Source of the DNA: Octopus sinensis
Lineage: Eukaryota
DNA length: 64,000 bases
Reading direction: 5' to 3'
Assembly: GCF_006345805.1 (NCBI RefSeq)
Contig: NC_043017.1
Location: forward strand, 19,282,001-19,346,000
In this document: piece by piece, positions 1 through 58,660 of the stretch
How positions within the stretch are numbered: the first letter of the stretch is position 1
Layout of the letters: each line of letters opens with the position of its first letter
The notes under the pieces: model-generated
Database searches by the model: none
What the model saw: the letters and a program-made list of their open reading frames with translations, nothing else
Told to the model about the DNA's origin: nothing
Translations under genes and position numbers: made by a program

Positions 1-261
1 AAGCATGACATTGTAATTGTGGCTGAAGGTGGACCGCTACAGAAGGACCCTGATCCTGAACAGACCAAGCTGAATGCCATCCCTGTCTTTCAACCTGTGC
101 TCAAGAGATCGATCAATGGGGGTCGAGGAGAAATGGAATACATTGACAAACTGGACCACCGCCAGGTGCTGTTGCTCTGTCTCCGTTACCAGCAGCACTT
201 GAAGCAGTTGTCAGAAGCTGTTGCTTTTGATCAGAATGCTCTCTGTATCCGAGTTAAAGAG
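1..261 (+). CDS. BORCS5: BORCS5 (LOH12CR1/myrlysin) penultimate coding exon; 5' end at or before the window start
   Basis: Frame 1 is open from base 1: KHDIVIVAEGG...DPEQTKLNAIPVFQPVLK...KLDHRQVLLLCLRYQQHLKQLSEAVAFDQNALCIRVKE. This matches BORCS5 motifs as I recall them (DDIVVVAQG, IPTFQPLLK, LCLRYQDHL, EAVAFDQNAL). Ends at phase-0 donor GAG|GTAAGT at 261/262. Confidence 0.93.
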
Positions 262-407
262 GTAAGTTTGGAGAGAGAGAGAGAGGGGAGTCGCAAAAAG
301 AAATGGGAGGAGAGAGAGAGACTTTATAATTTGTTAGACTATAAGTGAAATCTGTGTGTGTGTGTGTGTGTGTAGTGGAGTAAGTTGTATATCTATAGTA
401 TATATGT

Positions 408-3302: not shown

Positions 3303-3527
3303 ATTGATTACATGATGCATGTGTTATTGAACTCTCTCACGGACAGACAGAGGAAGTATGCCAAGTATACGGAACAGTTTCAGCGCGTCAGTGAAACACT
3401 GTCCATTTTGAATCGCATCAAAGGCTCTATAGACAATATAATTCCAAAGATGGAGCGTCTGAACCAGATGCTGCCGGAAACTGAACAGCTTGAACCATTC
3501 ACTATGAAATCCTTACCATCAAATTAA
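3303..3527 (+). CDS. BORCS5: BORCS5 terminal coding exon
   Basis: Polypyrimidine tract and CAG acceptor at 3300-3302, phase 0. IDYMMHVLLNSLTDRQRKYAKYTEQFQRV...MERLNQMLPETEQLEPFTMKSLPSN* matches the BORCS5 C-terminus (RQKRYAKYAEQ...RLNSMLPEGERLEPF). TAA at 3525-3527. Confidence 0.93.
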   Translation: MDYMMHVLLNSLTDRQRKYAKYTEQFQRVSETLSILNRIKGSIDNIIPKMERLNQMLPETEQLEPFTMKSLPSN

Positions 3528-5440: not shown

Positions 5441-5663
5441 TTAACTGGCAGAATTACTAGCATGCTGGGCAAAATGCTTAGCAATATTTTGTGTGTCTTA
5501 TTTGTTCTGAGTTCAAATTCTGCTGAGGTTGACTTTGCCCTTCATCCTTTTGGGATTGATAAATTAAGTATCAGTGAAACACTGGGTGTCGATGTATTTG
5601 ACCTGTCCCTTCCCACCAAATTTCAGACCTTGTGCTTTAGTAGAAAGGATTATTATTATTATT
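5441..5663 (+). mobile_element. SINE family A
   Basis: Same head and body with an (ATT)n tail. Confidence 0.8.
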
Positions 5664-8547: not shown

Positions 8548-9196
8548 TCGTATGGCATTTTGGACAAAGTGTCTTTCTACTGTAGTCTCGGCTCAAGCAA
8601 AAGTTTGTGAATGAGATCAATCAGACGTCATCAACATCATTTTAGTCTTTTGCTCCGTTGGACTGTGGCCATACATGAGCACCATCTCAAAGGTTTCAGT
8701 ATTTATTTTAAAGCCTGGTACTTACTCTGTTCATCTATTTTGCTGAATTTCTTTGTTACGGGGATAAAAACAAACCAACAGGAGTTGTCGGGTGGTGATT
8801 GAACACACACACACCAGGCTTCCACATAGCCTCTGTCTACCAAATTCACACATACAGCCTTGGTTGGCCCAAGGCTATAGTAGAAGACATTTACCAAGAT
8901 GCTGTGCAGTGGGACTGAACCTGAAACCATGTGGTTGGGAAGCAAGTTTCTTAACCACACAACCATTGCCTATGTATTTTCCATGCTGTCATGGGTTGGA
9001 CAGGTCTTGCAGTCTCATTACTCGTCACAGTTGTTCTTCTTCACACACAGCAACAAAGAAAAACCTACCAATCGTGCTGCTGTATATGTTTTTTTATTTA
9101 TTCATTTTGTTATTTGTTTTGCTTTTTCCTTTTTTTAAATCAGGATGTCTTTCCTACCACCATCCACTTCATAGAACAGTTCAAATGGATTTTATA

Positions 9197-9421
9197 AATG
9201 TCCTTCTCCAGGGATTTTCTTCGCATAATATGACCAAAATATGTCAATCTATGCTCGGTGATCCTAGCTTCTAGCGACATTTTCGGCCTGATCTGCTTAA
9301 GAACTTCTCCATTGGTGAGCCTCGCTGTCCATGGAATCCGTAAAAGTCTTCTCCAACACCAAAGCTCGAATGCATTAATTCTCTTCTGGTCAGCTTTCTT
9401 TAGTGTCCCGGTCTCGCATCC
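9197..9421 (-). mobile_element. RTE (BovB-like) LINE fragment, same family as 43661-44031
   Basis: KRINAFELWCWRRLLRIPWTARLTNGEVLKQIRPKMSLEARITEHRLTYFGHIMRRKSLEKDI. Confidence 0.9.
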
Positions 9422-9618
9422 ACACACACACACACACGTACAAATTATGGGGATTTAGTTCACAGGTGATCTAAACGATTAGGTACTCTAGGTAAGTACT
9501 GTAATGGATTACCAGGGCTCCAAGGTTATAGCTGTGAGTAGTTATGGAGCCATTGCAGATTTCCAATGCAGCGGATGTATAATTGTTAAAGAGGACAACA
9601 ATGTTTGTTGTCCTACAC

Positions 9619-9797: not shown

Positions 9798-10394
9798 TCC
9801 TACACACACACTTGAGTGAGTGCTGCAAAGTTCCTGGCTTAGGGTAAAAGAAAACACAGGGGGATCAGTTAATTATGATTTTATTTGTCGTGTTTCACAC
9901 ACTTATTGTAGCAGTCTTTCAGTTTTTCTAAGCCCTGTAAAAGAACTGAGAAGGTTGGGCCTCCAACCAGGCCTTTTGTGATACCCAGGAACCTTCCAGC
10001 ACCCCTTGTGTGTATATATATATGTAGTGAAGACATGTGCTTTAGGAGTTAGAGTATTTGGCTCACAGCCACACATTGTGTCCTTGAGCAAGGCACTTGA
10101 TTTCATGTTGCTCAGGTCACACAGCTGGCAAAAATGAATTGTTCCTGTAATTCAGTCACCGAATCTCCCTCAACTAGGGGTATCTACATCTGTGGAGTAC
10201 TCAGCCACTTGCACATTAATTTCACAAGCAGGCTGTTCCATTGATTGGATCATCTGGAACCGACGTCATCATGACCATATCAGTGCTGGTCATATATAGC
10301 ACCCATTATACTCTTGGAGTGGTTGGCATTAGGAAGGGCATCCAGCTGCAGAAACCATGCCAAATCAGTCTGGAATCTACTGCACCAGCACAGA

Positions 10395-10700
10395 TGCTTT
10401 TCATGTGGCACCATCATGAGTGCTTTTCATGTGGCACCATCATGAATGCTTTTCATGTGGCACCATCATGAGTGCTTTTCATGTGGCACCATCATGAGTG
10501 CTTTTCCTGTGGTACCATCATGAGTGCTTTTCATGTGGCACCATCATGAGTGCTTTTCATGTGGCACCATCATGAGTGCTTTTCATGTGGCACCATCATG
10601 AGTGCTTTTCCTGTGGTACCATCATGAGTGCTTTTCATGTGGCACCATCATGAGTGTTTTTCCTGTGGTACCATCATGAGTGCTTTTCATGTGGCACCAG
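10395..10700. repeat. 26-bp minisatellite, 11 full units plus a partial
   Basis: TGCTTTTCATGTGGCACCATCATGAG with the variant TGCTTTTCCTGTGGTACCATCATGAG. Confidence 0.95.
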
Positions 10701-12655
10701 CATAAGTGCTTTATATACACACACATGTGTGACTTGGACCCTGATGGATTCTTCAGTCTATGGGGGCATGGCATGTAGAAAAGCGCACCCAACATACCCC
10801 ATCAGCATTACTACTCTGTCCCCACCCTCCCTCTCTTTCAACTAATCCCTGACAATACCCTTCCTCTTGTCTTCTCCATTATTCCCACCCAAACACTATT
10901 CCCTTTGTTATTCTCTCTGCTATTACCTCCTTACAACAATAAATCAGTTCCTTTCGCCATGGGGATCTCTTTCACCTTGCAGACTACAAGACTTTCAAGG
11001 TAAACGAGAGCACTACTGGTCCCCCCCCCCAAAAAAAAGCACCCCGTACACTCTGCTGTAAGTGATTGGTAAATCACATCAATTTGTGATACCTGCCTGA
11101 AAGGGTTACCTGTTGACCAGGTAAGCTCACTGGTGCTGATCCATCAGCATTTTATACTGTGAAGTGGTTGGTGATAGGAAGGGCATCCAGCTGTAGAAAC
11201 CATGGCAGAGAAGAGAGATGAGAGCAAGACCAGTGTTAGAATGGGTATCCAGTTGTAGAAACAATTGGAAACCTGGAGCAAAACAATTGGAAACCTGAGA
11301 GCAAAACCTGGTTCCTCTGACTTGTACCATCTAACGATGATTTAGAAAAATTTAGTTGGATCTCATTAGGCACCAGGAAGCCATCAACTTGCAATCTGTA
11401 CAGTAAATTAATTAAATTTTTATCATTTCACTGTTAAAAACTTATACAATCCATTTATTTGTGTAAAATTTATGAATTATCATCCATGAGTTTAGTCATG
11501 CTACCTCACTCACCATTTAGGCGGGTGTGAGGCATAACAACTACTTAAAAGGAGCACTACCAAAAAAAAAAAATGGTTAAAACACACTGATCTAACCCAT
11601 GCCAGCATGGTAAGCAGATGTAAGGTGGTGATGATGATAATGAACAGCGTAATGGATGGATGGCCAGCTCAGTAGAGCATTTGGATAAATCACCTTATGG
11701 TATTTGGTTATGGTCCTTCACGTTCTGAGTTCAAATTCCACGCAAGTTGACTTTGCCTTTCCTCTTTGTGAGGTCAGTAAAAGAAAGCACCAAATGAAGT
11801 ACAGGGAAGTCAGTGCAATAACAGATCAAAACTTCTGAAGATGCTGCCCCAGCATGGCCACAGCCAAAGGAATGAAAGCAGTGAAAGAGAAAGAAATTTT
11901 ATGCTGATGTCACATAAAAAGCACCCAGCACATTCTGTAAAGTGGTTGGAATTAGGAAGTGCATCCACCCATAGAAACCAAGGCAAAACTGACGACGGAA
12001 TCTGATGCACCTCCTGTGAAACCGTCCAACCCATGTCAGCATGGAAAATGAACCTTAAGTGATGAGGAGGATGATCGTTAACCGAAAATGCTGGTATTGC
12101 ATAAATGATGGTGTGAGAGTTGTGTAGGTAAATATTAGATTTTTGTTCAGTTCTATTTCAAACAACATCTCAATGCACTAAAATGATAATTCTTTCTGGT
12201 TATTAATCCCATCTTAAAGAGAGAAAACTGGTTTGTAATTACAGGAACAGGCTTGGTTGTGTAGTTATGAAGCTCACTTCACAGTAATATGTTTCCAGGT
12301 TCAAATCTGCTACATACCATCTTGGCTAGGTGTCTTCCACGATGGTCTTGCGAGTAGAATTGGTAGACAAGCTTCTGCATTGTTTCAGGAGAGGCATTTA
12401 ATTTCAAAAAAGTACAAAACTTTACTCTCCGAAGTAAGAACGGATTTCAATGCAATTGTTGTAGCACACCGGCCCCTTTGTGGAGGTCCCATGGAAATCC
12501 GCCAAAGGGAAGGTGTTTAGGACCCTTGTCACATACAACAAATATCTTAATAATTATTGCAACAAGTATAGTTGTTATAGTCATCAAAGACATATATTGA
12601 TTACTTAACACAGAAATATTGTAATTTTTGATTATTATTTAAACTTAAAATAGAC

Positions 12656-21559: not shown

Positions 21560-22490
21560 TAACCACAAGGCCATGTGACCCTTCCAACAAAACATAAACA
21601 TATGCTCACATGAACACACATCAGAATACACACGTTCACATGCAACACACACACACACACACACACACATAAAAATACACAAATATCCATACACGCATAC
21701 TAGCACAGACACATTCACACACGCATGCATACAAACATAAACACACATACAAACATACGCTTAAACACAAACTCACACAAACATACATGCATGTATGCAC
21801 ACATGCAAATGCACACCAACACACATTCAAACGTGCACATGTGTGCACACACACAGACATACACACACGTACAAACACATTCAAACATGTGCACATGCAT
21901 GCACACACACACACACACACACATATAGACACATACAAACACATTCAAACACATGCACACTCACACATACACATATTCAAACACACGTGCATGCACACAC
22001 ATACACATTCAAACACACATGTGCATGCACACACACACACATACACATTCAAACACACACACATGTGCATGCACACACATACACATTCAAACACACACAC
22101 ATGTGCATGCACACACACACACATACACATTCAAACACACGTGCATGCACACACACACACATACACATTCAAACACACACACATGTGCATGCACACACAT
22201 ACACATTCAAACACACACACATGTGCATGCACACACACACACATACACATTCAAACACACGTGCATGCACACACACACATACACATTCAAACACACACAC
22301 ATGTGCATGCACACACACACACATACACATTCAAACACACGTGCATGCACACACACACACATACACATTCAAACACACGTGCACATACATTCAAACACAC
22401 ATGTGCATGCACACACACACATACACATTCAAACACACGTGCATGCACACACACACATACACATTCAAACACACACACACACACACACAC
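21560..22490. repeat. (CA)-based compound minisatellite
   Basis: About 13 units of 22-44 bp, AAACAC..ATGTGCATGCACAC..ATACACATTC, at 21975-22465 within a longer CA-rich tract. Confidence 0.93.
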
Positions 22491-22583
22491 ATTGAGGTCT
22501 TGTTTCTTACAACCAATATGTCACTTCTGCTTTTCCTCGTTATCCTTGCCTCGTTTATTTCCATTAGCTCAGTCTAAGTATTT

Positions 22584-22866
22584 GTCATCATCATCATCAT
22601 CATAGTTGTCATTGTCATCAATATCATCATTTCCACCTTCACCATCACCACCATGCTCTTCATTCCCACCACCACTGCCACTGCTGTTACTACTACCACC
22701 ACCACCACCACCACCAGAACCTTTGTTCTCACTGCCACCACCACCACAACGGTTGCTGCTACAACCACCACTGTGCATCCACTCCCACCACCACCACCAC
22801 TACTACCTTTGCTACTGTTACACTGTTGCTACCACCACCACCATGTCACTACTATCATCATCATCA
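22584..22866. repeat. (CAT/CAC/CTA)n trinucleotide low-complexity tract
   Basis: Direct reading. Confidence 0.88.
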
Positions 22867-23830: not shown

Positions 23831-25177
23831 AGATATGTCAAGTTTATTGAGGCAGTGTTGTTCACAGAAAATACCAATTCTATTTTTGGTAGATATCAAA
23901 CATCATTACACGTTGTAAAGTGTTTGGCATTAGAAAAGGGCATATTTCCGTAGAAACCAAAGCCAAACAGACTATGGAACCAGATGTGGCCCTGGCCTTG
24001 CTATCCAACCCGTGTCAGCATGGAAAACAAATATTAAGTGATAACGCAGATGATTACCGGAATAACCAAGAAATTTAATTTTGCAATTAAAGGGTTGACA
24101 AAAAGAATAAGATTAACCATTTTTGGCTGTGTGGTAAGTAGCTTGCTTACCAACCACATGGTTCCGGGTTCAGTCCCATTGCGTGGCATCTTGGGCAAGG
24201 GTCTTCTACTATAGCCTCGGGCCAACCAAAGCCTTGTGAGTGGATTTGGTAGACGGAAACTGAAAGAAGCCATCGTATATATGTATATATGTGTGTGTAT
24301 GTTTGTGTGTCTGTGTTTGTCCCCCTAGCATTGCTTGACAACCAATGCTGGTGTGTTTACGTCTCCATCACTTAGCGGTTCAGCAAAAGAGAGCGATAGA
24401 ATAAGTACTGGGCTTACAAAGAATAAGTCCCGGGGTCGATTTGTTCGACTAAAGGGCGGTGCTCCAGCATGGCCGCAGTCAAATGACTGAAACAAGTAAA
24501 AGAGAAAGAGAAAGATATGTCAAGTTCATTGAGGCAGTGTTGTTCACAGAAAATACCAATTCTATTTTTGGTAGATATCAAACATCATTACACTCTGTAA
24601 AGTGTTTGGCATTAGGAAGGGCATATTTCTGTAGAAACCAAAGCCAAACAGACTATGGAACCAGATGTGGCCCTGGCCTTGCTATCCAACCCGTGTCAGC
24701 ATGGAAAACAAATATTAAGTGATAACGCAGATGATTACCGGAATAACCAAGAAATTTAATTTTGCAATTAAAGGGTTGACAAAAAGAATAAGATTAACCA
24801 TTTTTGGCTGTGTGGTAAGTAGCTTGCTTACCAACCACATGGTTCCGGGTTCAGTCCCATTGCGTGGCATCTTGGGCAAGTGTCTTCTACTATAGCCTCA
24901 GGCCGACCAAAGCCTTGTGAGTGGATTTGGCAGACGGAAACTGAAAGAAGCCCGTCGTATATATGTGTGCGTATGTTTGTGTGTCTGTGTTTGTCTCCCT
25001 AGCATTGCTTGACAACCGATGCTGGTGTGTTTACGTCTCCGTTACTTAGAGGTTCAACAAAAGAGCGATAGAATAAGTACTGGGCTTACAAAGAATAAGT
25101 CCTGGGGTCGATTTGTTTGACTAAAAGGCGGTGCTCCAGCATGGCCGCAGTCAAATGACTGAAACAAGTAAAAGAGT
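23831..25177 (+). repeat. Tandem duplication of a ~682-bp unit (flank plus SINE family B)
   Basis: 23831-24512 versus 24513-25177; SINEs at 24125-24512 and 24806-25177. Confidence 0.9.
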
Positions 25178-25359: not shown

Positions 25360-25776
25360 AAAGGCGGCGAGCTGGCAGAAACGTTAGCACGCCGGGCGAA
25401 ATGCTTAGAGGTATTTCGTCTGCTGTTACGTTGTGAGTTCAAATTCCGCCAAGGTCGACTTTGCCTTTCATCCTTTCGGGGTCGATAAATTAAGTACCAG
25501 TTACGCACTGGGGTCGATGTAATCGACTTAATACGTATGTCTGTCCTTGTTTGTCCTCTCTGTGTTTAGCCCCTTGTGGGTAATAAAGAAATAGGTATTT
25601 CGTCTGCCGTTACGTTCTGAGTTCAAATTCCGCCGAGGTCGACTTTGCCTTTCATCCTTTCGGGGTCGATAAATTAAGTACCAGTTACGCACTGGGGTCG
25701 ATGTAATCGACTTAACACCTATGTCTGTCCTTGTTTGTCCTCTCTGTGTTTAGCCCCTTGTGGGTAATTAAGAAAT
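25360..25776 (+). mobile_element. Young SINE family A with internal tandem duplication
   Basis: Full copy followed by a repeat of its 3' ~185 bp; the whole is flanked by 14-bp TSD TGGAAGGTTTTAAT. Confidence 0.9.
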
Positions 25777-26224
25777 TGGAAGGTTTTAATTTAGATCTCT
25801 TTAAGGATGTACAAATTTCATTACATTATCTCTCGATTTAAGATTGATTCTGCCCTTCGTCCAGGATTGGGTTCGCTAAAGTATTAGACAAATACTGAGG
25901 TCATTTTTCAATATTCCTGTTAAGCATTCTGGATGAGAGAAGAATTTAAATAGATTCAATGAATGTTGTAGAATTAATAATGACTTTCCACCAAGAGTTT
26001 CCTCCCTTCTCTTGTCTCTCTCTCTCTCTCTCTCTGTCAGCCTCATCCATCATTTTCTGGTCTGTCCATTTCCTTTCTGAACCTACCTCCTACATACATG
26101 TCACCACTACCACCACCACCACCACCACCACCATCACCAATGCCCTCCCCCCCCATACTCTCTGCTACCGTCAACAGTTAATAGTTTAGTTCTTGCTCTA
26201 ATCTTTATAGAAAGTATAGGATAT

Positions 26225-27100
26225 GCATTCATCAGCATCATCATTACCACCAACACCATCATCATCATCATCATTAGTATCATCATTATCATCATCACTA
26301 CTAACATTATCATCATCATCATCATCACTTTCACCACCACCATGATAAATGTCATCATCACCAATACTGTTACAAGTACTATCATCATCATTGTTGTCAT
26401 CATCATCATCACCATCACTACCAGCACTATTCCAATCATTTGTATTGTTACTATCATCACCACTATCATCATCATCATCGTCATATTTATTACCATTCCA
26501 TAACCATCCTGCACCATTCTCATAATCATCATTATAACTATCACCATCATTATCAACTTTCTCTCCTCTACCTCTTTTTCTTCTGTTTTTTTTCTTTTGC
26601 TGTCTTTGACATCCTCATCCCCTCCCTGCTTCTTCATATCCACATCATTATCATCATCACATCATAAACACCACCATCGTCACCATCATCATTTTCATCA
26701 TCACCACCACCATCATTATCATCATCACCACCATCACCACCACCACCATCATTTTCATCATCATCATCACTACCATCATTTTCATCATCATCACCACCAC
26801 CACCATCATTTTCATCATCATCACCACCACCATCATTTTCATCATCATCATCACCACCACCACCACCATTTTCATCATCATCATCACCACCACACCATCA
26901 TTTTCATCATTATCACCACCACCACCATCATTTTCATCATCATCACCACCACCATCATTTTCATCATCATCACCACCACCACCATCATTTACATCATCAC
27001 CACCACCACCATCATTTTCATCATCATCATCGTCATCACCACCACCACCATTTTCATCATCATCATCACCACCACCATCATTTTCATCATCATCATCGTT
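26225..27100. repeat. (CAT/CAC)n tract with a CACCACCATCATTTTCATCAT sub-array
   Basis: The sub-array recurs many times between about 26670 and 27095. Confidence 0.93.
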
Positions 27101-27704
27101 ATCCCTGTTGTTATCACAAAAGCCATCGTGGATGCCTCTGTGTCCCTACTATTGATAATGTCCAGCGCCAGAGGGGAGAGGGATGGTCGAGGTCACATAG
27201 GGGTTTACAGGGAAACGCTTCTCTGTGTACATTGCACTGAACTTCACAGCATCTCACATTATCTACCACTCTCTCTCTCTCCCTGTCTCTCTCTCTCTCT
27301 CTCCTTCTTCTTCACATTCTCTTCCTCCACCCCTCTCTCTCTCCCGCACTCAGCCCATCTCTCGGAACACTTGTCGGACTATTGGTTTCCTCTTCTGTGT
27401 AGTGTGACAGCTGAACTGAGAAACTTGAAGCTAAGAGACACAGACAGGACTGCGATAGGCTTGCCTTGTCTATTTACTTACTGAAACAGCATCAACGAAA
27501 AGAGAGACTTCTAAGACACAATATAACGTATCTATATTCCGCTGAGAACAAGAATTGGAGGAAAATAAGACAGGCAAGTATTGATGAATATATGATTTAT
27601 TTGATTACTCACACACACACACATATAGATAAAAAAATCATATATGTATTGATGAATATATATATATATATATTATATATATATGATTTTATATATTATA
27701 TATA

Positions 27705-27739
<35 letters not shown>

Positions 27740-27879
27740 CCACACATAATATGGTATGTATATTCTTGAATATTTATAAATTGATGAAAATAGATACATG
27801 TAAATATGACTTTAATTATATATAAAAAAAATATACATATATATGAATGTAATTCATGTATGTATATGTGTGTGTATGT

Positions 27880-28256
27880 CTCTGTCTATCTATCTATCTA
27901 TGTATATCTATCTATATTTATCTATAATATATATATATATATATATATAATATATATATATATATATCTATCTATCTATATATCAATCTATATCTATCTA
28001 TATATATATATATATATCAATCTATATCTATCTATATATATATCAATCTATATCTGTCTATCTATCTATCTCTATCTATATCTGTCTATATATCTATCTA
28101 TCTATCTCTATCTCTATCTATCTATCTATCTATCTATATATATATTTATCTCTCTATCTATATCTGTCTATCTATCTATCTATCTATCTCTATCTGTCTA
28201 TCTATATCTATCTATCTATATCTATATCTGTCTATCTATCTATATCTGTCTATCTA

Positions 28257-28301
<45 letters not shown>

Positions 28302-28538
28302 CTATCTGTCTATATCTATCTATCTTTCTATATCTATCTTTCTATATCTATCTATCTATATCTATCTATCTATCTCTGTCTATCTATCTATATCTATTTA
28401 TCTATATCTATCTATCTATCTATATATCTATCTGTCTATCTATCTTTATCTATATCTATCTATCTATCTATATATCTATCTGTCTATCTATCTATATCTA
28501 TTTATCTATCTATCTATCTATCTATATCTATCTTTCTA

Positions 28539-28583
<45 letters not shown>

Positions 28584-28680
28584 CTATCTATCTATATCTA
28601 TCTATCTATCTATATATCTATCTGTCTATCTATCTATATCTATTTATCTATCTATCTATCTATCTATATCTATCTTTCTA

Positions 28681-28721
<41 letters not shown>

Positions 28722-28806
28722 CTATCTATCTATATCTATCTATCTATCTATATATCTATCTGTCTATCTATCTATATCTATTTATCTATCTATCTATCTA
28801 TCTATT
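27880..28806. repeat. ~0.93-kb degenerate (TATC)n / GATA satellite
   Basis: Direct reading. Confidence 0.95.
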
Positions 28807-29421
28807 TCATCATCCTCATTTAATTTACATTGCCCAAGCTGTCATACACAAACACACATAGCGCAGAAGTGGTTGTGTGATAAGTAGCTTGATAATAACC
28901 ACATGTCTCCAAAGTTCAGTCTCACTATGTGGCATTTGGGGCAAGTGTCTTCTACTATAGCCTCGAGCCGACAAAAGCCTTGTGAGTGGTTTTGGTAGAC
29001 AGAAACTGAAAGAAGCCCATCGTATATATATGTGTGTATATATATATATATATGTGTATATATATATATATGTGTATATATATATGTGTATATATATATA
29101 TATATATAAATATAAAGTGAGTTAACTTTTTTTGAAATTTTATTTTAACTTTAAAACTTTCAACTTTTTAAGCTAAGAAGATGCTGTCTTACTTATTAAA
29201 AGGTTGATGGTTCCCATCCATCTCACCAGCCTTGCACTGCATTCACTCTCAATAGTTCAACTTATATAGACAACAAACATTGTATACAATCGCAGCGTGG
29301 AAGGTGTTTATGAGCCATTTGAGAAACACACAAGGACCGTTAGATTCACTTCAACATTTAAATTCAATTTGTCAAAATATTTTCGTCGCTTTGGGACTGC
29401 AACCTGTTCACTGACAGCACA

Positions 29422-35985: not shown

Positions 35986-36705
35986 CAAATGTCCACAGAG
36001 AAAGAGAGAAGAAGCACTCACATGCACACACTCAGAGGTATAGCACTGTGGTTAAGAAGCTTGCTTTGCAACAAAATAACTTCAGGTTCAATCCTGCTGC
36101 ATGGCAGTTTGGCTAAGTGTCGAGTGCTTCATAAAATGCACCCAATTCACTCTGCAAAGTGTTTAGCATTAGTAAGGGCATCCAGCTGTAAAAACCATAC
36201 CAAAGCAGACCGTGGAGCTTGGTGCAGTCCGCAGCTTTACCTGCACCTGTAAAACCATCCGACACATCCCAGCGTGGAAGATGGATGTTAAATGAGGATG
36301 ATGATGATGCTCATGACAATGGTAATACATAGTTTGTTCATGAAATGAGAATTTAGAAACTTCCAGAGACATAAAATAACTGATTTTTAACAGTGGGATA
36401 CGAAGTAGATGAAGTTATAAATAATAACATTTAAATATTGGATTAAAAAAGCCCTTGAATGGAAAATGTTAGTTTTTGTTTTGTTTTAAAGGCCAATGTT
36501 TAGATGCTATTATCTATAGCTTTATCTACTTTGCGTTCCACCATTAAAAACTATACACCCATTATATGCAACAGAATCAGTATTAGTTTAAAATTGCCAT
36601 TTATGTATCACACTCAATGTAAATGCATCTCTATTTGTAACCACAACACATCCATTGGACAAATACTGCTGTAAAGTTTGCCTGTCCTAATGTGTATACA
36701 TTAGG

Positions 36706-37062
36706 TGCAGGTGTGGCTTCCCAATTATATGGTTCTGGGTTCAGTTCCACTGTGTGACTCCTTGGGCAAGTGTCTTCTATAGCCTCAGGCTGACCAAAGC
36801 CTTGTGAGTGGATTTGGTAGACGCAAACTGAAATAAGCCCATCGTATATATATATATAGATGTGTGTGTGTTTGTGTCTATATTTGTCCCCTCACCATCA
36901 CTTAACAATGTTGGTGTATTTACATCCCTGTAACTTAGTGGTTTGACAAAAAAGACTGATAAAATATGTATTAGACTTAGAAAGAATAGGTCCAGAGGTA
37001 GATTTCTTTGATTAAAAGGTGGTGCTCCAGCATGGCCTCAGTGAAATGACTGAATAAAAGAA
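36706..37062 (+). mobile_element. SINE family B
   Basis: Head GGTGCAGGTGTGGC, partly deleted; body and tail present. Confidence 0.8.
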
Positions 37063-37078
37063 TACAAGAGCTGATATG

Positions 37079-37132
<54 letters not shown>

Positions 37133-37135
<3 letters not shown>

Positions 37136-37359
37136 ATGTCATGATAGATCGTTAGCTCCTACACACACGCATTTTTTCTCTCCTTGTTTCTCTCTCCTTG
37201 TTTCTCTCTTTGTTTTCGTCTGTGTTCTTTCTGTCGAAGAGCATAGACTCGAACGTAAAGACTTTTTCTATTTCTATTCCTGAGCGCCATACTAATACAC
37301 TTGTTTGTTTGTACTCCACCTGCCTTCGTCTTTTGTTTATTTTCGTAAACTTTCCCTGT
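37133..37359 (+). mobile_element. Family F1 element, copy 1; damaged hammerhead motif at 37226-37261
   Basis: TCTTT-CTGTCGA-A-GAGC(ATAG)ACTC-GAAC-GTA-AAGA, with one core A deleted. Between a long (TA)n tract and a short one, ending about 90 bp upstream of the GPCR ATG. Confidence 0.72.
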
Positions 37360-37447
37360 ATATATATATGGAAAACGGACGCTAAATGATGATGATGATA
37401 TGTATGTGTGTGAGTATGTATTTATGTATATATATTTGTTTATACAG

Positions 37448-37784
37448 ATGAAAATGACGACTCTATCCAACTGGACACAACCGTTATCCACAATGGTTTC
37501 TCTGCTGGCACCAAATGAAACGTCTGGTGAAAATGAGGAATCAGATCTACAAAACGAAAGCTGGGAATTCTACATTTATTATTATGGAATGTTCTGTTTG
37601 GTGGCCGTCGTTAATTTAACTGGCAATTCACTGGTAATTAGTACAATAATAAGACACCGTCAATTACAATATTGTTGTAACTGGTTTCTCCTCAGTTTGG
37701 GCTTCTCTGACCTTCTACAGGGTTTTGTCTACCCCATATATAATTTGTCACACATCGAGATATCTGCTATCAGCGAACCTCTTG
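37448..37784 (+). CDS. Class A (rhodopsin-like) GPCR, exon encoding N-terminus, TM1, TM2 and ECL1; subfamily unassigned
   Basis: MKMTTLSNWT...NET...NES (three N-glycosylation sequons), TM1 with GNSLVI, ICL1 RHRQLQ, TM2 NWFLLSLGFSDLLQGFVYP. Preceded by acceptor-like TATACAG immediately before ATG. Ends at phase-1 donor CTTG|GTAAGT (37784/37785). No TM3-TM7 exon found in the window. Confidence 0.88.
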
Positions 37785-38047
37785 GTAAGTATCATTCCAG
37801 TTGTTGTTGTTGTTGTTGTTGCTATTTATTACCATTTATAATTGTTGTTGATGTTGTTATTATTACTAGTGGGGACCCGTGAGCATTTCACGGAATCAAT
37901 GGTACACCTATTGGGTTGTTTCTGAAATCTTTATTCAAAAAGCCTGAAAGCATAGCCTGTGTTGTGTCTGCATGAAAAGATAGTCATTCATCTGCTTCTT
38001 ATTGAAAAGTGAAAGAAATTGGAATATGATGATTATTAATGCACTTC

Positions 38048-42331: not shown

Positions 42332-43660
42332 CTATATATCTCTGTCTGTCTATACAAGTTGATGCTTTGAGTTCCATCTATGCTGTTTTTACTACCAGAC
42401 ACACACATATACACGCGTGCATATCTGTGTATGTGTGTGCGCATGTGTGTATGTTCAAAGAATATTTTAAATCGACATGCATCTAATAAAATGCTTTATG
42501 CATCTCATTAATTAATTCAAACTAGAATAAATGACTGGAATAAATGACAAAATAAACATTTTCTTTTTTTTTTTATAGAGTAAATATTGAAAATACTTCT
42601 TTGAATTCTGTCTTGTGTCATTTCCATAATCCAGTCCTCCCTCCCTCTCTCCCTCCTCCTCCTCTTTCTTTCTTTCTTTCTTTCAATATCAAAGTGGTTT
42701 AAATATCAAAGGCTATGGATATCAAATATCAAAACCAGGTGTGGATTCTTCCATGTTTATCTCAGGGTATTCCTTAGCAGGAGATTTGGCAGATTAGAGT
42801 TAAAAAAGGGTGAAAATAATAATCCATTATCTTTGAGTCAATATTATTGTTTTCTTTATGTCTTTTCCTTTTGTTTTTGTTTGTTGTTTTGAAATGCTTT
42901 TATTGTTTTCTTTTCATTTTTTCTTGGGGGGGGGGCATGGGATTTTATTTATTTTTTAATTTTTTTTTTGGTTTTGGTCTTTGTGGAGTATTGTGTAATA
43001 TGAAATCAATGTAGATCAATAACTATTCAATTATCAGGCAGTGAAAGGTGGGTGGAGTGGGGGGATGGGTTAGAGAATGAGATTTCATGTTTATCCTCAT
43101 CATCAACATCATCATCATTGTCAACAGTGATATCACTACCATCATCATCGTTATCATCATTGTCCTTGCTTTCATCATCTCTAACATTATCATCATCATC
43201 ATTGTCACCATCTCCACCATCGTCATCATTCTCATCAATGATGTATATTTAAAATCTTACGATAAAGCTCAAGTCTTCTCCCTTATAGACCCCTATGATT
43301 AAGGAGATGATGATGATCATCATCGTTTAACGTCTGTTTTCCATGCTAGCATGGGTTGGATGGTTCAACTGGGGCTTTGCTCTTGGATCCTCCCCCCATC
43401 CATGTAGTACCTTTGGTCAGGGTTTTTAACCAAAGCTTTGAGTTGGCCCAGGGCTTCCGAAATTGTTTGTTTGTTTAATGCCCGTTTTTGCTTTCCTTCT
43501 TTTCTTTTCCATGCTAGCATAGGCTTGGCTGGGGAGTGGTTTGAAGTTGGATTTTATGGCCTGATGCTTGCAAGGTACTTGGTGACTGTTGGTAATGGTG
43601 TCACATAAAAAGCACTGGTGGTGGTACCATATAATAATCACTGGTGCTCTGGTGTCACAT

Positions 43661-44031
43661 AATTAATGCATTCGAGCTTTGGTGTTGGAGAAGACTTTTA
43701 TGGATTCCATGGACAGCGTGGCTCACCAATGGAGAAGTTCTTAAGCAGATCAGGCCGAAAATGTCGCTAGAAGCTAGGATCACCAAGCATAGATTGACAT
43801 ATTTTGGTCATATTATGCAAAGAAAATCCCTGGAGAAGGACATCATGCTCGGAATGGTCAGTGGCAAGAGAGGAAGTGGCCGACCAAGAACCCGCTGGCT
43901 TGACAACATCAAGGGTGATACCGGAATGGACATAGCCAATCTGAAAGAAGCGGCCCAGGATAGAACTGACTGGAGGACACTGATCCAAAGAGTAATCGAG
44001 AGTCGACTTCAACTGAGCGGATAGATAGATA
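43661..44031 (+). mobile_element. RTE (BovB-like) LINE, 5'-truncated 3' end with (GATA)n tail
   Basis: INAFELWCWRRLL.IPWTA..TN.EVL...RLTYFGHIM...GRPRTRWLDNIK. Tail GATAGATAGATA and 11-bp TSD GGTGTCACATA. Confidence 0.92.
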
Positions 44032-53015: not shown

Positions 53016-54052
53016 TGTGCATTTCTCTTTTACCCGTTACATATTTCAATCCTTAAGCTGCAGCCATGCTGGAGCGTTACCTTGAAGAATATATAGTTGA
53101 ATGAAACAACCTCAGTTCCTATTTTCTTTTGTAAGTTTGGCATTGACTCTATTAGTCTCACTTGCCAAACTGCTAAGTTACAGGGGAAGTAACCACACCA
53201 ACACTGGTTGTCAAGTGGTGGTGGTCAGAGACAAACACAGATACAAAAACACACACACACATCAGCATCAACATCATTTAACGTCTATTGTCCATGCTGG
53301 TATGGGTTGGACATGTGTGTGTGTGTGTGTGTGTGTATGGCAGGCTTCTTTCAGTTTCTGTTAACCAAATCCTCTCAAGGCTTTGATCAACCTGAGGCTA
53401 CTATAGAAGACGCTTGCTCCTATGATGATGATGATGATTTAAGAAGTAAAAGAAGTTCTAATTATTAAAAAATGTGTAACCAAAGTAAAAACAAAAAAAC
53501 ACAAAAACAACAAACAAAAACAAACAAACAAAAATACATAATTTTAATGGGAAATAGGAAGAAGTCTGTTGTTACGTCAGTTTCAAAGATAAATGTGTCT
53601 GTTTATTGTGTGGCAGTATTATTGAAGTGTCGAAAAAAAAAAAGTAATGTTGAATGTGATTTCGTCTGATCGTACGTCTTTTAATAACAGCCACCCACTT
53701 AAATCTGAAATAAGGAGGTGGTAAATAAATTAGCTCAAATCAAGTCTATTGATCCCATAATAAAGTTTTATGCATCATCATCATCATAACATCTACTTTT
53801 CAATGCTTACATGGGTGAGACAGATTTTCTTGATGAGTTTCTGTAGATGGATGCCCTTCCTGTTACCAACCCTTACCTGTTTCCAAGAAAGGTAATCTTT
53901 CTCTATGGCCAGGTATGCATTGTAGGTCGGTGTTTGTTGAGGCTGTCTGTGAATGATTTAATGACACCTTGTAAACATTTAATTATGGTTTTATTTATGC
54001 CACACAAGTTGGTTATGGATTACAAAAATCTCCACAAAGACCTGTATATATA

Positions 54053-54243
54053 TAGATCATTAGCTCCTACACACATTTTTTTCTCTCCTTGTTTCTCTCC
54101 TTGTTTTTTTCTGTGTATCTTTCTGTCGAAGAGTGTAGGCTCGAAATGTAAAAGACTTTTTCTATTCCTGAGCACTATACTAATACATTTGTTTGTTTGT
54201 ACTCCACCTGTCTTTTTCTTTTGTTTATTTTCGTAAACTTTCC

Positions 54244-54246
<3 letters not shown>
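54053..54246 (+). mobile_element. Family F1 element, copy 2; hammerhead motif at 54118-54155
   Basis: TCTTT-CTGTCGA-A-GAGT(GTAG)GCTC-GAAAT-GTA-AAAGA. Flanked by TA repeats on both sides. Confidence 0.75.
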
Positions 54247-54306
<60 letters not shown>

Positions 54307-55424: not shown

Positions 55425-56800
55425 TCTTCCAGGCAATGACAGGGGAATTCAAGACAATCTGCCCCTGGGAGCTCCTCTATGCTAATGACCTTGCTGAATC
55501 ACTATCTGAACTAGAGAAGAAACTCCAGGTATAGAAGCAAGGTCTAGAATCAAAGGGTCTTAAAGCTAAACAAGCAAAAAACCAAAGTCTTAGTAAGTAG
55601 GAAGGAAGACAAATCACAAATCCCTTCAGGTAGATGGCTCTGCTCCATCTCTGGAAAGGTTGTAGATAGAAACTCCATAAGATGCACTCCATAAAAGGTG
55701 CAGCAATATCAGGGGAAGGTTAATAGGGAAACTAGCTTTTGTATGTGGAAGATGCACAGGTACAATAAACACTAAAAATGGGCTGAGAACAAACTCCATC
55801 AGCTGCCTGGGGTGCCAGCTAGAGGTTGTAGATAGCTTCTGTTATCTAAATGACCAAGTTAGTAGTGGAGGTGGATGCTCTGAGAGCATAGCTGTGAGAA
55901 TAAGATTAGGATGGGCAAAGTTCAGAGAGCTCCAACACCTGCTGGCAACGAAGGGCCTCTCTCTCAGAGTGGAAAGCAGACTGTTTGATGTCTGTGTGTG
56001 AACAGCTATGTTGCATGACAGGGAAACATGAGTTGTAACAGCTGAGGACATGTGTAGACTTGAATAAAATGAAATCAGTATGCTTTGCTGGATGTGCAAT
56101 GTCAGTGTGCATGTTCGACAGAGTATAAACATCTTGAGAGAAAAGTTAGGCATAAGAGAATCAGTTGTGGTGTGCAAGAAAGACGACTGCACTGGTATGA
56201 TTATGTGATGCATATGGACTAGGACAGCTATGTAAAGAAGTACTGATCTCTAACTGTGGAGGGAACCCTGTAGTAGAGGTAGATCCAGAAAGACATGGGA
56301 CGAGGTGGTGAAGCATGATCTTCAAACTTAGAGCTTCACAGAGGCAATGACTAGTGACTGAGTCACTTGGGGATGTGCTGTGCTTGAGAGGACCTGTCAA
56401 GCCAAATGCACCTGTGCTGGTGGCACGTAAAGAACACCTTTTGAGCATTGGGCCTCACAGAGGCAAAGTGGCTGAGTTCCTTTTGAGTGTTGGGCCTCAT
56501 GAAAGCAATGACCAAGATCTTTAGCATTATGTTGTGCTTGAGAAGAAGACCCATCAAGCCAAGTAAAGTCACAGTCGTGGCAGATACCAGTGTCACACAA
56601 ATGGCACCTGTGCTGGTGGTACGTAAAAGCAACCATTACACTCTCAGAGTGGTTGGCATTAGGAAGGGCATTCAGCTGTAGAAAACCATGCCAAATCAGA
56701 CTGGAGTCTGTTGCAGCCTTCCAGCATGCCAGCCCCAGTCAAACCGTCCAACCCATGCCAACATGGACACCAGACGTTAAATGATATTGATGAAGATGAT
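55425..56800 (+). mobile_element. Second RTE-clade LINE, decayed RT/C-terminal region plus its 3' UTR
   Basis: Broken frames give PWELLYANDL (YADD-like), KTKVLVS..GRW.CS, EVVDSFCYL, RIRLGWAKFREL and RGRSRKTWDEVV. These continue into the GGCATTAGGAAGGGCAT...GACGTTAAATGAT 3' UTR that recurs alone throughout the window. Confidence 0.85.
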
Positions 56801-56827
56801 CCACCATTCTGACTACCTTGTTATTCT

Positions 56828-56883
<56 letters not shown>

Positions 56884-56885
<2 letters not shown>

Positions 56886-57091
56886 CCATGTTGATTCGCT
56901 AGCTTCTGCACGCATTTTTTTTCTCTCCTTGTTTCTTTCCGTGTTTCTTTTCTGTGTATCTTTCTGTTGAAGAGCATAGGCTCGAAACGTAAAAGACTTG
57001 TTTTATTTATATTCCTGAGCGCCATACTAATACAATTGTTTGTTTGTATTCCACCTGCCTTCGTCTTTTGTTTATTTTCATAAAGCTTCCC

Positions 57092-57093
<2 letters not shown>
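56884..57093 (+). mobile_element. Family F1 hammerhead-bearing element (probable PLE 3' end or non-autonomous derivative), copy 3
   Basis: About 210 bp, homologous to 37133-37359 and 54053-54246, embedded between two long (TA)n tracts. Confidence 0.75.
56959..56996 (+). ncRNA. Minimal type-I hammerhead ribozyme motif, family F1, best copy (core variant A6->U)
   Basis: TCTTT-CTGTTGA-A-GAGC(ATAG)GCTC-GAAAC-GTA-AAAGA: 5-bp helix I, 4-bp helix II, palindromic ACGT replacing helix III, predicted cleavage after GUA at 56991. Confidence 0.7.
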
Positions 57094-57162
<69 letters not shown>

Positions 57163-57699: not shown

Positions 57700-58660
57700 G
57701 TCTAATTGCTTTGTCTGTTTAATGAGTGTTATCTTAGACAATGACATGACGAAGTAAGAAGAGATGTGATACAGTGTGAATGACCAGAGAGAGAGAGAGA
57801 GAGAGAGATGAGAACTGGATGGGTGACTGGGGCTTGGAAGAGGAAAAGTAGAGAGTTGATAGTTCAGAGCAGCAGAGGCTATTGTTGTTGTTAGTGGTTG
57901 TCAGAGACAGGTCTGTTGAGGATTAGATCGTTTCTAATTACTTCAATAGACGTCATTTGGATTCAGTCTTGGATTTGGATGTTAATGATTGTAACAGCAG
58001 CACTGTCTCATAGATATGAGTAACACTCCAGTATGTGAGTGATACTCCAGTAGGAGTAGTCTTCAGTGGGAGTGATACTCCAGTGTGAGTGGTACTTCAG
58101 TGTGAGTTGTACTCTAGTGTGAATATTATTTCTGTGTGAGTGGTACTTGAATGTGAGTGATGCTCCAATGTGAATGGTTTCTAGGGTTTGTTGAAGTGTA
58201 GCAGGAGATCCAGTCAGAAGTGTTTCCGGACTTTAGATCATTTTACTGTAGTTTTGGGTATCTTACGTAGGAGGGATCTCCATGAAGGATCATTGAGGAT
58301 TCCGAGGTCTTTCCAGAGGGTTTTATTGTAGGGTGTTCCTGATTATTAGAGAGTGTGAACCACAAGACTTGCTTCCTTGTTAAAAGAAACTCGGATGTTC
58401 TGTCTGCCATGGGAAGATGTTCTTGGATTTAGAGTATGTCCTGGCATAAGGTGTTTAAATTGTATTTGAATGACTGCTGTGTGCATAAGGTTAAGGAGGA
58501 GTAAAGGGTCAAAGGAATGACAACAAATAGGCCATCGATATATGGAAGGAAGAGAGTAGGGGTCAGTAGTGAACCTTGGGGTACACCAGGTGTAATACAA
58601 ATATGAGTTAGAGAGGTCTTCATTAGCACAAACTGCAATGTTTACTGAGGTGCAAAGATG
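57700..58660 (-). mobile_element. Old CR1/Jockey-type LINE remnant
   Basis: GVPQGSLLTPTLFLPYID RT motif on the minus strand at about 58540-58600; the rest is frame-disrupted and boundaries are approximate. Confidence 0.6.

What the first reader, a model, noticed from the sequence alone, without database searches (positions are those of the whole stretch)
56959..56996. Family-wide non-canonical hammerhead core (A6->U) with loopless ACGU helix III
Seen: all three F1 copies read CTGTYGA instead of CTGANGA, while helix I (TCTTT/AAAGA), helix II (GAGY-RTAG-GCTC), GAAA and the GUA site are kept in the two better copies. Because U6 is shared, it is ancestral to the family rather than copy decay. A15.1-C-G-U16.1 has no loop, so helix III can only form by pairing two motifs through the ACGU palindrome. 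Established: A6 is one of the near-invariant core positions. Inferred: either an active natural core variant that standard descriptors miss, or a family that amplified with a dead ribozyme. Both outcomes are informative.
Basis: partly seen in the sequence, partly recalled or inferred. Interest (0 to 1): 0.78.

Follow-up and report, generated by a model that had tools for sequence, protein, structure and literature searches.

The report
Minimal hammerhead relic in octopus repeat
A 200-base repeat in an octopus genome, always inserted into (TA)n microsatellites, carries a stripped-down hammerhead ribozyme motif of a kind already described in Penelope-like retrotransposons, but with an essential A replaced by U in every copy seen, so it is probably a crippled ribozyme that spread anyway.

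Summary
At 56959-56996 the + strand reads TCTTT-CTGTTGA-A-GAGC-ATAG-GCTC-GAAA-CG-T-A-AAAGA. The motif lies in a ~200-nt repeat, F1. F1 has three copies in the window and a fourth on another Octopus vulgaris chromosome. All four have U at core position 6.

It is not chance: a matching descriptor hit once in 40 Mb of simulated sequence.

The loopless ACGU helix III is not new. Together with the extra nucleotide after A9, G10.1-C11.1 and a 5-bp helix I, it defines the published "min-HHR" of Penelope-like elements (PLEs), which acts weakly and only as a dimer.

All eight F1 flanks are (AT)n, the insertion target reported for Naiad PLEs and proposed for Neptune PLEs. No PLE gene was found nearby, so that link is inferred.

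Nothing suggests catalysis:
- Rfam models miss the motif.
- No covariation, and no unusual folding stability.
- The motif is no better conserved than the rest of F1.
- Differences between copies fall mostly at CpG sites.

Published PLE work shows that insertion does not need hammerhead cleavage. The most likely reading is a new octopus member of a known class that amplified with a crippled core. Four copies are too few to settle the family consensus.

The parts
56884..57092 (+). F1 repeat, copy c56 (~209 nt), the copy holding the reported motif
   Evidence: blastn, MAFFT and nhmmer; covariance-model hit of 99.8 bits
56959..56996 (+). min-HHR-like motif: helix I TCTTT/AAAGA; core CTGTTGA (U6 at 56967); unpaired A at 56971; helix II GAGC-ATAG-GCTC; GAAA; palindrome A-CG-U; A17 at 56991 (predicted cleavage after 56991)
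   Evidence: sequence, pattern search, descriptor scan
56830..56883 (.). (AT)27 microsatellite abutting the 5' end of c56 (inferred half of the target)
57094..57146 (.). (AT)n microsatellite abutting the 3' end of c56 (inferred other half of the target)
54052..54247 (+). F1 repeat, copy c54. Motif 54118-54155: TCTTT-CTGTCGA-A-GAGT-GTAG-GCTC-GAAA-TG-T-A-AAAGA, with U.G wobbles at 10.4-11.4 and 15.2-16.2. Flanked by (TA)5 at 54045-54054 and (AT)24 at 54247-54294
37134..37358 (+). F1 repeat, copy c37. Degenerate motif 37226-37262: CTGTCGA core, GAA instead of GAAA, C x A mismatch in helix II. Flanked by (AT)27 at 37080-37133 and (TA)5 at 37359-37369. About 65 nt upstream of the start codon of a GPCR first exon

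Best explanation
F1 is a ~200-nt non-autonomous (or minimal solo) retroelement of an Octopus genome.

It integrates into (TA)n microsatellites. In sense orientation, about 100 nt from its 3' end, it carries a minimal hammerhead (min-HHR) of the kind found in the pseudo-LTRs of Penelope-like elements (PLEs). That type has a short open helix I, a 4-bp helix II closed by G10.1-C11.1, one unpaired nucleotide between A9 and G10.1, GAAA, and no helix III beyond the palindromic A15.1-C-G-U16.1. A helix III could therefore form only between two motifs.

The source copy already carried U instead of the near-invariant A6. That change, the lack of a partner motif in cis, and the weak 4-bp intermolecular helix III together make the ribozyme very probably inactive or barely active. 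The family spread regardless, because PLE-type reverse transcription and insertion do not depend on hammerhead cleavage. After insertion the copies decayed neutrally.

Shown: the motif and its architecture; U6 in 4 of 4 copies; (AT)n at all 8 flanks; absence of covariation and of excess conservation.
Inferred: descent from a true hammerhead; mobilisation by a PLE; lack of catalysis.
For: 1. [quoted passage not shown] F1 has the extra A and G10.1-C11.1 in 4 of 4 copies. The CG step at 15.2-16.2 is present in 3 of 4 copies (c54 has UG), and it forms the full ACGU palindrome in the 2 copies that also keep GAAA.
2. A chance origin is unlikely: 1 descriptor hit in 40 Mb of simulated sequence, and 0 with the hallmarks required.
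3. All 8 flanks of the 4 independent insertions are (AT)n. Such runs cover 2.5% of the window. Flank lengths are asymmetric at random (10/48, 54/11, 54/53 nt for the three window copies), as expected for insertion into an existing microsatellite rather than an element-borne tail. (TA)n is the reported preferred target of Naiad PLEs, and a similar bias was hypothesised for Neptune PLEs. Octopus spp. carry old Naiad remnants (PMC8557442).
4. The predicted cut site lies 96-102 nt from the 3' end in all four copies. In the one PLE studied biochemically, the distance from the HHR cut site to the reverse-transcription start is 85-92 nt (PMC11167929).
5. That paper also shows that HHR-dead mutants insert normally. 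[quoted passage not shown]
6. No sign of selection on the motif in the copies: 0 compensatory pairs. The motif has 12 of 38 variable columns, against 27 of 131 in the rest of F1. Most of the substitutions lie at CpG sites: TCGA to TTGA, GCGT to GCAT or GTGT, ACGT to ATGT.
7. An internal T8 run and the absence of any tRNA-like part argue against a pol III SINE.
Against: - No PLE reading frame (RT or GIY-YIG) was found next to any copy or anywhere in the window.
- No pseudo-LTR, tandem or inverted arrangement is seen, and the 5' ends are nearly constant rather than randomly truncated. The PLE link rests on the target preference and the motif type alone.
- Only 4 copies were obtained, from 248 kb of sequence, so an A6 subfamily or an A6 genome-wide consensus cannot be excluded.
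- Published min-HHRs of Schistosoma have a longer helix II (7-8 bp) than F1 (4 bp).
- The significance estimate uses a descriptor written after the fact and a simple Markov null.
- Inactivity is predicted from mutational literature, not measured.
Confidence: 0.55

Rival explanations
1. Chance look-alike. F1 is an unrelated short repeat, and this stretch is simply an imperfect 12-13-bp hairpin. It resembles a hammerhead only because a short, low-information descriptor was applied with one mismatch and one insertion allowed.
For: - The minimum-free-energy fold of the motif alone is an extended hairpin. U4.G16.2, G5-C15.2 and U6-A15.1 pair between helices I and II. It scores -9.2 kcal/mol, against -6.8 for the hammerhead secondary structure.
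- In context, folding is no better than shuffled sequence (z = -0.70), and the MFE is not the hammerhead fold.
- No Rfam hammerhead model matches, even at E <= 10 on about 200 nt.
- With helix I relaxed to 4 bp, an unrelated single-locus near-miss appears in 124 kb (L002 10624-10666).
- The authors of the min-HHR paper note that relaxed descriptors give overwhelming numbers of hits.
Against: - 1 hit in 40 Mb of simulated sequence at the stringency actually met, and none with the extra-nucleotide and G10.1-C11.1 hallmarks.
- Three independent hallmarks of true min-HHRs are present.
- The element also shows the (TA)n targeting reported for Naiad PLEs, whose relatives carry such motifs.
Confidence: 0.2
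2. Hammerhead-derived but kept for a non-catalytic role. The stem-loops, possibly with the U6-stabilised alternative helix, would serve as a recognition or folding element for the mobilising reverse transcriptase or endonuclease, or for transcript stability. The source copy would keep the shape while catalysis is dispensable.
For: [quoted passage not shown]
- In the Anolis PLE, the RNA region needed for insertion lies next to the HHR, and cleavage is not needed.
- U6 adds a base pair to an alternative helix that is compatible with all four copies.
Against: - No covariation or excess conservation supports any structure.
- In the Anolis element the required RNA lies downstream of the HHR, not in it.
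- Copies of a transposable element record the source copy, not selection, so this cannot be tested on four copies.
Confidence: 0.15
3. Active natural core variant. An A6U hammerhead cleaves after GUA (56991) when two motifs pair through the ACGU palindrome, perhaps with host factors. The family would then be a working ribozyme that standard descriptors miss.
For: - U6 is fixed in 4 of 4 copies while the neighbouring N7 varies freely (U, C, C, A). In the three better copies every other core position is intact, as are G10.1-C11.1, the GUA site and the extra nucleotide.
- Rare natural core variants, including A6C, retain low activity (PMC3088659).
- Canonical min-HHRs cleave only as dimers.
Against: - A6 substitutions strongly reduce cleavage. 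The natural A6C has kobs < 0.1 per min and is described as disrupting one or two hydrogen bonds.
- Even canonical min-HHRs cleave poorly in vitro.
- F1 copies are solitary, not tandem. The dimer would therefore rest on a 4-bp intermolecular helix, about -1 kcal/mol by my nearest-neighbour estimate.
- U6 favours a competing fold.
- There is no covariation.
Confidence: 0.07

Closest known systems
min-HHR of metazoan Penelope-like elements (Cervera & de la Pena 2014, PMC4209133)
   Same: - Type I layout with a short open helix I (5 bp here).
- No helix III or loop 3, and a palindromic 15.2-16.2.
- One unpaired nucleotide between A9 and G10.1, plus G10.1-C11.1.
- Expected to work only as a dimer.
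- Mostly found as dispersed single motifs.
   Different: - U instead of A at core position 6 in every copy seen.
- Helix II is 4 bp, against 7-8 bp in the Schistosoma families.
- No PLE reading frame or pseudo-LTR arrangement was found next to the copies examined.
Naiad (and possibly Neptune) Penelope-like elements (Craig et al. 2021, PMC8557442)
   Same: - Strong insertion bias for (TA)n microsatellites, which hides target-site duplications.
- Naiads lack canonical hammerheads, though some keep core-like strings.
- Old Naiad remnants are reported in Octopus spp.
   Different: - F1 is about 200 nt with no coding capacity.
- No sequence link to a Naiad or Neptune consensus could be tested.
- For Neptune, the paper cites the target bias only as a hypothesis.
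Non-LTR retrozymes and Sm-alpha-type SINE-like repeats with type I hammerheads (Cervera & de la Pena 2020, PMC7229834)
   Same: - Short (170-400 nt), AT-rich, non-coding repeats carrying a type I hammerhead.
- Thought to be mobilised by PLEs.
- The vertebrate forms need dimers to cleave.
   Different: - Retrozymes are tandem arrays with canonical cores, a real (short) helix III and circular RNA products.
- The four F1 copies are solitary, lack helix III and have U6.
Natural hammerheads with core substitutions (Perreault et al. 2011, PMC3088659), e.g. A6C in phage Bcep176
   Same: A natural departure at the same near-invariant core position.
   Different: That case is a single locus with three normal helices and measured (low) activity. 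Here the change is to U, in a multi-copy family, with no activity data.

Membership tests
Hammerhead ribozyme (canonical, as in the Rfam hammerhead families) | Core C3-U4-G5-A6-N7-G8-A9 | tested here: not met
   CTGTTGA, CTGTCGA (twice) and CTGTAGA: U at position 6 in 4 of 4 copies, plus an extra A after A9
Hammerhead ribozyme (canonical, as in the Rfam hammerhead families) | G12-A13-A14, A15.1-U16.1 and H17 cleavage site | tested here: met
   GAAA...U-A is present in c56, c54 and the L003 copy. c37 has lost one A
Hammerhead ribozyme (canonical, as in the Rfam hammerhead families) | Three helices around the core within one molecule | tested here: not met
   Helix I (5 bp) and helix II (4 bp) are present. 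A-C-G-U has no loop, so no intramolecular helix III can form
Hammerhead ribozyme (canonical, as in the Rfam hammerhead families) | Match to a curated covariance model | tested here: not met
   No hammerhead hit at gathering score on the window, nor at E <= 10 on the c56, c54 or L003 copies
Hammerhead ribozyme (canonical, as in the Rfam hammerhead families) | Self-cleavage at H17 | not testable with these tools
   Needs transcription and cleavage assays, or mapping of RNA ends
min-HHR of Penelope-like elements | No helix III or loop 3; positions 15.2-16.2 palindromic | tested here: met
   CG at 15.2-16.2 in c56, c37 and the L003 copy, forming the full ACGU palindrome in c56 and L003. c54 has AUGU, a CpG-to-TpG change
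min-HHR of Penelope-like elements | One unpaired nucleotide between 9 and 10.1, and a G10.1-C11.1 pair | tested here: met
   A, then G...C closing helix II, in 4 of 4 copies
min-HHR of Penelope-like elements | Canonical catalytic boxes CUGANGA and GAAA | tested here: not met
   GAAA is kept in 3 of 4 copies. CUGANGA fails at position 6 in 4 of 4
min-HHR of Penelope-like elements | Located in the pseudo-LTR of an element encoding RT and GIY-YIG endonuclease (in at least some copies) | tested here: inconclusive
   No RT(YxDD) or GIY-YIG remnant of PLE type in the window, and none beside the L003 copy. Published min-HHRs are mostly solitary too. Only 4 copies were seen
min-HHR of Penelope-like elements | Consensus families with covariation in the helices | tested here: inconclusive
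   0 compensatory changes; only one G-C to G.U change and mismatches. Four closely related copies give no power
Non-LTR retrozyme | Head-to-tail tandem repeats of 170-400 nt, each with a type I hammerhead | tested here: not met
   All four copies are solitary. The nearest pair (c54 and c56) is 2.8 kb apart and separated by LINE and SINE debris
Non-LTR retrozyme | Linear and circular RNA products | not testable with these tools
   No transcriptome data were available
(TA)n-targeting PLE insertion (Naiad; hypothesised for Neptune) | Insertion into (TA)n microsatellites | tested here: met
   8 of 8 flanks are (AT)n runs of 10-100 nt, against 2.5% of the window in such runs
tRNA-derived SINE | tRNA-like head with A and B boxes; no internal pol III terminator | tested here: not met
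   ARAGORN finds nothing in 36.9-57.3 kb. F1 has a T7-T8 run near its 5' end. The B-box-like GGCTCGAAAC has no matching T-arm stem

The most novel reading that the evidence does not exclude
The U6 core is functional. Under this reading, a whole octopus repeat family uses an A6U hammerhead that cleaves after GUA when two motifs pair through the ACGU palindrome, or with a host chaperone. It would be the first natural multi-copy hammerhead lineage with a substituted position 6, and current descriptors and Rfam models would be systematically blind to such ribozymes.
Probability: 0.06. Interest if true: 0.65.

Novelty: new member of a known kind. Interest (0 to 1): 0.3.

Why it matters
If the reading is right, F1 is a natural experiment on what the hammerhead does for Penelope-type retroelements. 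A family would have reached a rough density of one copy per 60-180 kb of octopus genome with a core change expected to cripple cleavage. That density comes from only 248 kb sampled. Such a result would support, from genome data, the in vitro finding that insertion does not need ribozyme cleavage.

It also shows that descriptor-based and Rfam-based ribozyme surveys miss both min-HHRs and their core variants. Counts of 'hammerhead-bearing' repeats in invertebrates are therefore lower bounds.

For ribozyme biochemistry, the family offers a ready-made A6U versus U6A pair in a natural scaffold.

The practical value is modest. The class, its dimer logic and its (TA)n-targeting carriers are already published.

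Tried and rejected
Attempts to get more F1 copies:
- An exact-pattern scan of viral contigs found nothing.
- Scans of metagenome contigs and of prokaryote genome contigs each gave one unrelated chance hit.
- A protein-database search with the open minus-strand frame of F1 found no candidate.
- A search with the GPCR first exon, meant to reach orthologous loci, found nothing.
- A look-up of a window ORF was not on record.

What did work: a SINE-derived ORF hit nine 'hypothetical predicted proteins' of Octopus vulgaris. Their loci (184 kb) yielded one more F1 copy. Loci fetched in parallel calls were not written to the script machine, so they were searched with a purpose-built covariance model instead.

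Explanations rejected:
- tRNA-derived SINE: no tRNA-like part, and an internal T-run.
- MITE or Helitron: by eye, no terminal inverted repeats and no TC...CTRR ends.
- c54 and c56, 2.8 kb apart, as the two pseudo-LTRs of one PLE: the interval holds LINE C-terminal fragments and a SINE, not a PLE frame, and each copy has its own (AT)n flanks.
- An alternative register that would restore CUGANGA: none works on either strand without breaking helix II or GAAA (by eye).

A Pfam scan of the whole six-frame translation was dropped as too costly. A motif grep was used instead.

Full report
**What is in the sequence**

The window is animal DNA. It is rich in (AT)n and (GT)n microsatellites and in interspersed repeats. 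A translated SINE-type repeat from the window matches only 'hypothetical predicted proteins' of Octopus vulgaris. The window therefore comes from an Octopus species.

At 56959-56996 the + strand reads TCTTT CTGTTGA A GAGC ATAG GCTC GAAA CG T A AAAGA. In hammerhead numbering this gives:
- a 5-bp open helix I (TCTTT/AAAGA);
- C3 U4 G5 U6 U7 G8 A9;
- one unpaired A;
- a 4-bp helix II that starts with G10.1-C11.1 and is closed by a 4-nt loop;
- G12 A13 A14 A15.1, then C15.2 G16.2 U16.1 A17.

With that A, the core departs from consensus twice.

**The family**

The motif sits in a ~200-nt repeat, F1. F1 has three + strand copies in the window: 56884-57092, 54052-54247 and 37134-37358. They are 86-89% identical. 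The sequences outside them are unrelated, so they are separate insertions.

To obtain copies from elsewhere I fetched nine O. vulgaris loci, 184 kb in all. I searched them with nhmmer and with a covariance model of the motif region. One further copy turned up, on OX597840.1 (L003 16111-15924, minus strand). Nothing else scored above 22 bits in 248 kb. As a rough guide, that is one copy per 60-180 kb.

All four copies have T at position 6, while position 7 is T, C, C or A. The 5' half of F1 holds one to three copies of a ~15-nt unit, TCTCTCCTTGTTTC.

**Is it more than chance?**

I wrote a min-HHR descriptor at the stringency the motif actually meets: helix I >= 5 bp, helix II >= 4 bp, at most one core mismatch, zero or one extra nucleotide, and no loop 3. 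It hit once in 40 Mb of first-order Markov sequence scanned on both strands. It did not hit at all when the extra nucleotide and G10.1-C11.1 were also required. A looser version gave about 0.01 hits per 64 kb.

In the real window only the F1 copies match. With helix I relaxed to 4 bp, one unrelated near-miss appears in L002. That shows how fast specificity falls as the descriptor is relaxed. Because the descriptor was written after seeing the motif, the numbers are optimistic. Even so, a chance origin for a motif inside a 200-nt repeat consensus looks unlikely.

**What kind of hammerhead it resembles**

Cervera and de la Pena (PMC4209133) defined a minimal hammerhead (min-HHR) without helix III or loop 3 and found it in large numbers in metazoan genomes. 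It lies in the pseudo-LTRs of Penelope-like elements (PLEs), but mostly occurs as dispersed single motifs.

Those authors list features that their own descriptor did not impose but that recur in real examples:
- a conserved G10.1-C11.1 pair;
- palindromic 15.2-16.2;
- a short helix I of 4-5 bp.

F1 has all of them. The same paper reports no cleavage by monomers and only weak cleavage by dimers, trimers or constructs with an extended helix III. The only real departure in F1 is A6 to U.

Natural variation at position 6 has one published precedent. An A6C hammerhead in phage Bcep176 has kobs below 0.1 per min, and the substitution is described as disrupting one or two hydrogen bonds (PMC3088659).

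**What carries it**

Every one of the eight flanks of the four copies is an (AT)n run of 10 to about 100 nt. Such runs make up 2.5% of the window. In the three window copies the two flanks of a copy are unequal in no consistent direction (10/48, 54/11, 54/53 nt). That fits insertion into an existing microsatellite rather than an element-borne tail.

A strong bias for (TA)n is reported for Naiad PLEs, and a similar bias was hypothesised for Neptune PLEs. Naiads lack canonical hammerheads, though some keep core-like strings. In cephalopods, including Octopus spp., they survive as old remnants (PMC8557442).

In all four F1 copies the predicted cut site lies 96-102 nt from the 3' end. In the Anolis Poseidon element, the hammerhead cut site lies 85-92 nt upstream of the site where reverse transcription starts, which defines the 3' end of insertions (PMC11167929). 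I treat this similarity as suggestive only.

Other points on the carrier:
- F1 has an internal T7-T8 run and no tRNA-like part, so it is not a pol III SINE.
- It has no terminal inverted repeats.
- I found no PLE reverse transcriptase or GIY-YIG remnant in the window. The only RT remnant, at about 58.6 kb on the minus strand, has a LINE-type GVPQGS motif.

The PLE link is therefore an inference from the target preference and the motif type. It has not been demonstrated.

**Does it work?**

Nothing in the sequence argues for catalysis.
- Rfam's hammerhead models do not match at gathering score, nor at E <= 10 on each of three copies.
- The four copies show no compensatory change in either helix.
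- The motif is not better conserved than the rest of F1: 12 of 38 variable columns against 27 of 131.
- Most of the substitutions in it are transitions at CpG sites: TCGA to TTGA, GCGT to GCAT or GTGT, ACGT to ATGT. That is the signature of neutral decay.
- The CpG-restored ancestral motif is TCTTT CTGTCGA A GAGC GTAG GCTC GAAA CG T A AAAGA.
- Folded alone, the motif prefers an extended hairpin in which U4.G16.2, G5-C15.2 and the new U6-A15.1 pair stack between helices I and II. That fold scores -9.2 kcal/mol, against -6.8 for the hammerhead secondary structure.
- In its natural context the fold is different again, and no more stable than shuffled sequence (z = -0.70).
- The copies are solitary, so a dimer would depend on a 4-bp intermolecular ACGU/ACGU helix. 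My nearest-neighbour estimate for that helix is about -1 kcal/mol.

On the other side, copies of a transposable element record the state of their source. They do not record selection on themselves. Lack of conservation among copies therefore says little about the source copy. U6 fixed beside a freely varying N7 is what both a 'founder mutation' and a 'functional variant' would predict.

**Why a dead ribozyme could still spread**

In the only PLE reconstituted in vitro, C3G and G8C mutations abolish hammerhead cleavage but do not affect insertion. No RNA ends were found at the cut site in RNA-seq data (PMC11167929). Naiads that lack canonical hammerheads outnumber hammerhead-bearing PLEs by orders of magnitude in some genomes (PMC8557442). 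A family that amplified with a crippled core is therefore what current knowledge would lead one to expect.

**Verdict**

Its most striking feature, the missing helix III, belongs to a known class. The carrier behaves like a (TA)n-targeting PLE derivative.

The new elements are the host (an octopus repeat not described in the papers I could search) and U6 shared by all four copies seen.
- Most likely (0.55): a min-HHR relic with a founder A6U change, in a non-autonomous PLE-type element, catalytically dead or nearly so.
- Chance look-alike hairpin: 0.2.
- Hammerhead-derived structure kept for a non-catalytic role: 0.15.
- Truly active A6U variant: 0.07.

The decisive steps are a genome-wide census of position 6 by subfamily, a search for F1 at the ends of PLE reading frames, and cleavage assays with a U6A revertant. 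None of these could be run here.

Noticed in passing
window 1-345 and 3201-3524 (+): Two exons of a BORCS5/LOH12CR1-family gene. Pfam LOH1CR12 matches profile positions 2-60 and 64-129, with E = 2e-13 and 2e-17.
   Followed up: partly
window ~37424-37765 (+), within ORF 37400-37882: First exon of a rhodopsin-family GPCR (Pfam 7tm_1 N-terminal part, E = 1e-6, just under the curated cut-off). Its start codon lies about 65 nt downstream of F1 copy c37. A protein search with it found no homologue in the large database.
   Followed up: partly
window 56884-56958, 54052-54117, 37134-37225; L003 16111-16053: The 5' half of F1 holds a variable number (1, 2, 2 or 3) of a ~15-nt unit, TCTCTCCTTGTTTC. Copy length therefore varies upstream of the motif.
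   Followed up: partly
window 54118 and 56959 (F1 motifs c54 and c56): Two F1 motifs lie 2.84 kb apart in the same orientation, a spacing reminiscent of PLE pseudo-LTR pairs. The interval holds LINE C-terminal fragments (55681-56205, +) and a SINE with a GAT-repeat tail (about 56250-56805), not a PLE reading frame.
   Followed up: yes
window 10330-10771: A tandem array of a 26-nt unit, with at least 12 copies in register, up to 95% identical in the middle of the array.
   Followed up: no
window 21650-22700, 26130-27500, 27800-28860: Long cryptic simple-sequence blocks: CA/CAT-rich, 9-nt-periodic CAT/CAC, and TCTA-like. They show strong negative GC skew (down to -0.55) and create spurious ORFs of up to 351 codons.
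   Followed up: no
window, e.g. 472-554, 5504-5586, 25430-25512, 25614-25696; 1003-1467, 24096-24454, 36700-37060: Several abundant SINE-like families, one with an internal (AT)n/(GT)n microsatellite. ORFs that run through such repeats match O. vulgaris 'hypothetical predicted proteins' at up to 86% identity. Those annotated proteins are therefore probably repeat-derived artefacts.
   Followed up: partly
window 58432-58641 (-), 9143-9454 (-), 43638-44021 (+): Decayed non-LTR (LINE) fragments: an RT motif GVPQGS at about 58.59 kb, and two copies of a conserved C-terminal region (FELWCWRRLLRIPW...). Pfam gave no hit at E <= 0.01 for the RT fragment or for the 43638-44021 copy, which were the pieces tested.
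   Followed up: partly
L002 10624-10666 (+): A single-locus near-miss hammerhead with three helices, in which A9 is replaced by U (ACTA CTGAAGT GATC...GATC GAAA TTACATGAT C TGGT). It is found only when helix I is relaxed to 4 bp, and was taken as an example of a chance match.
   Followed up: no
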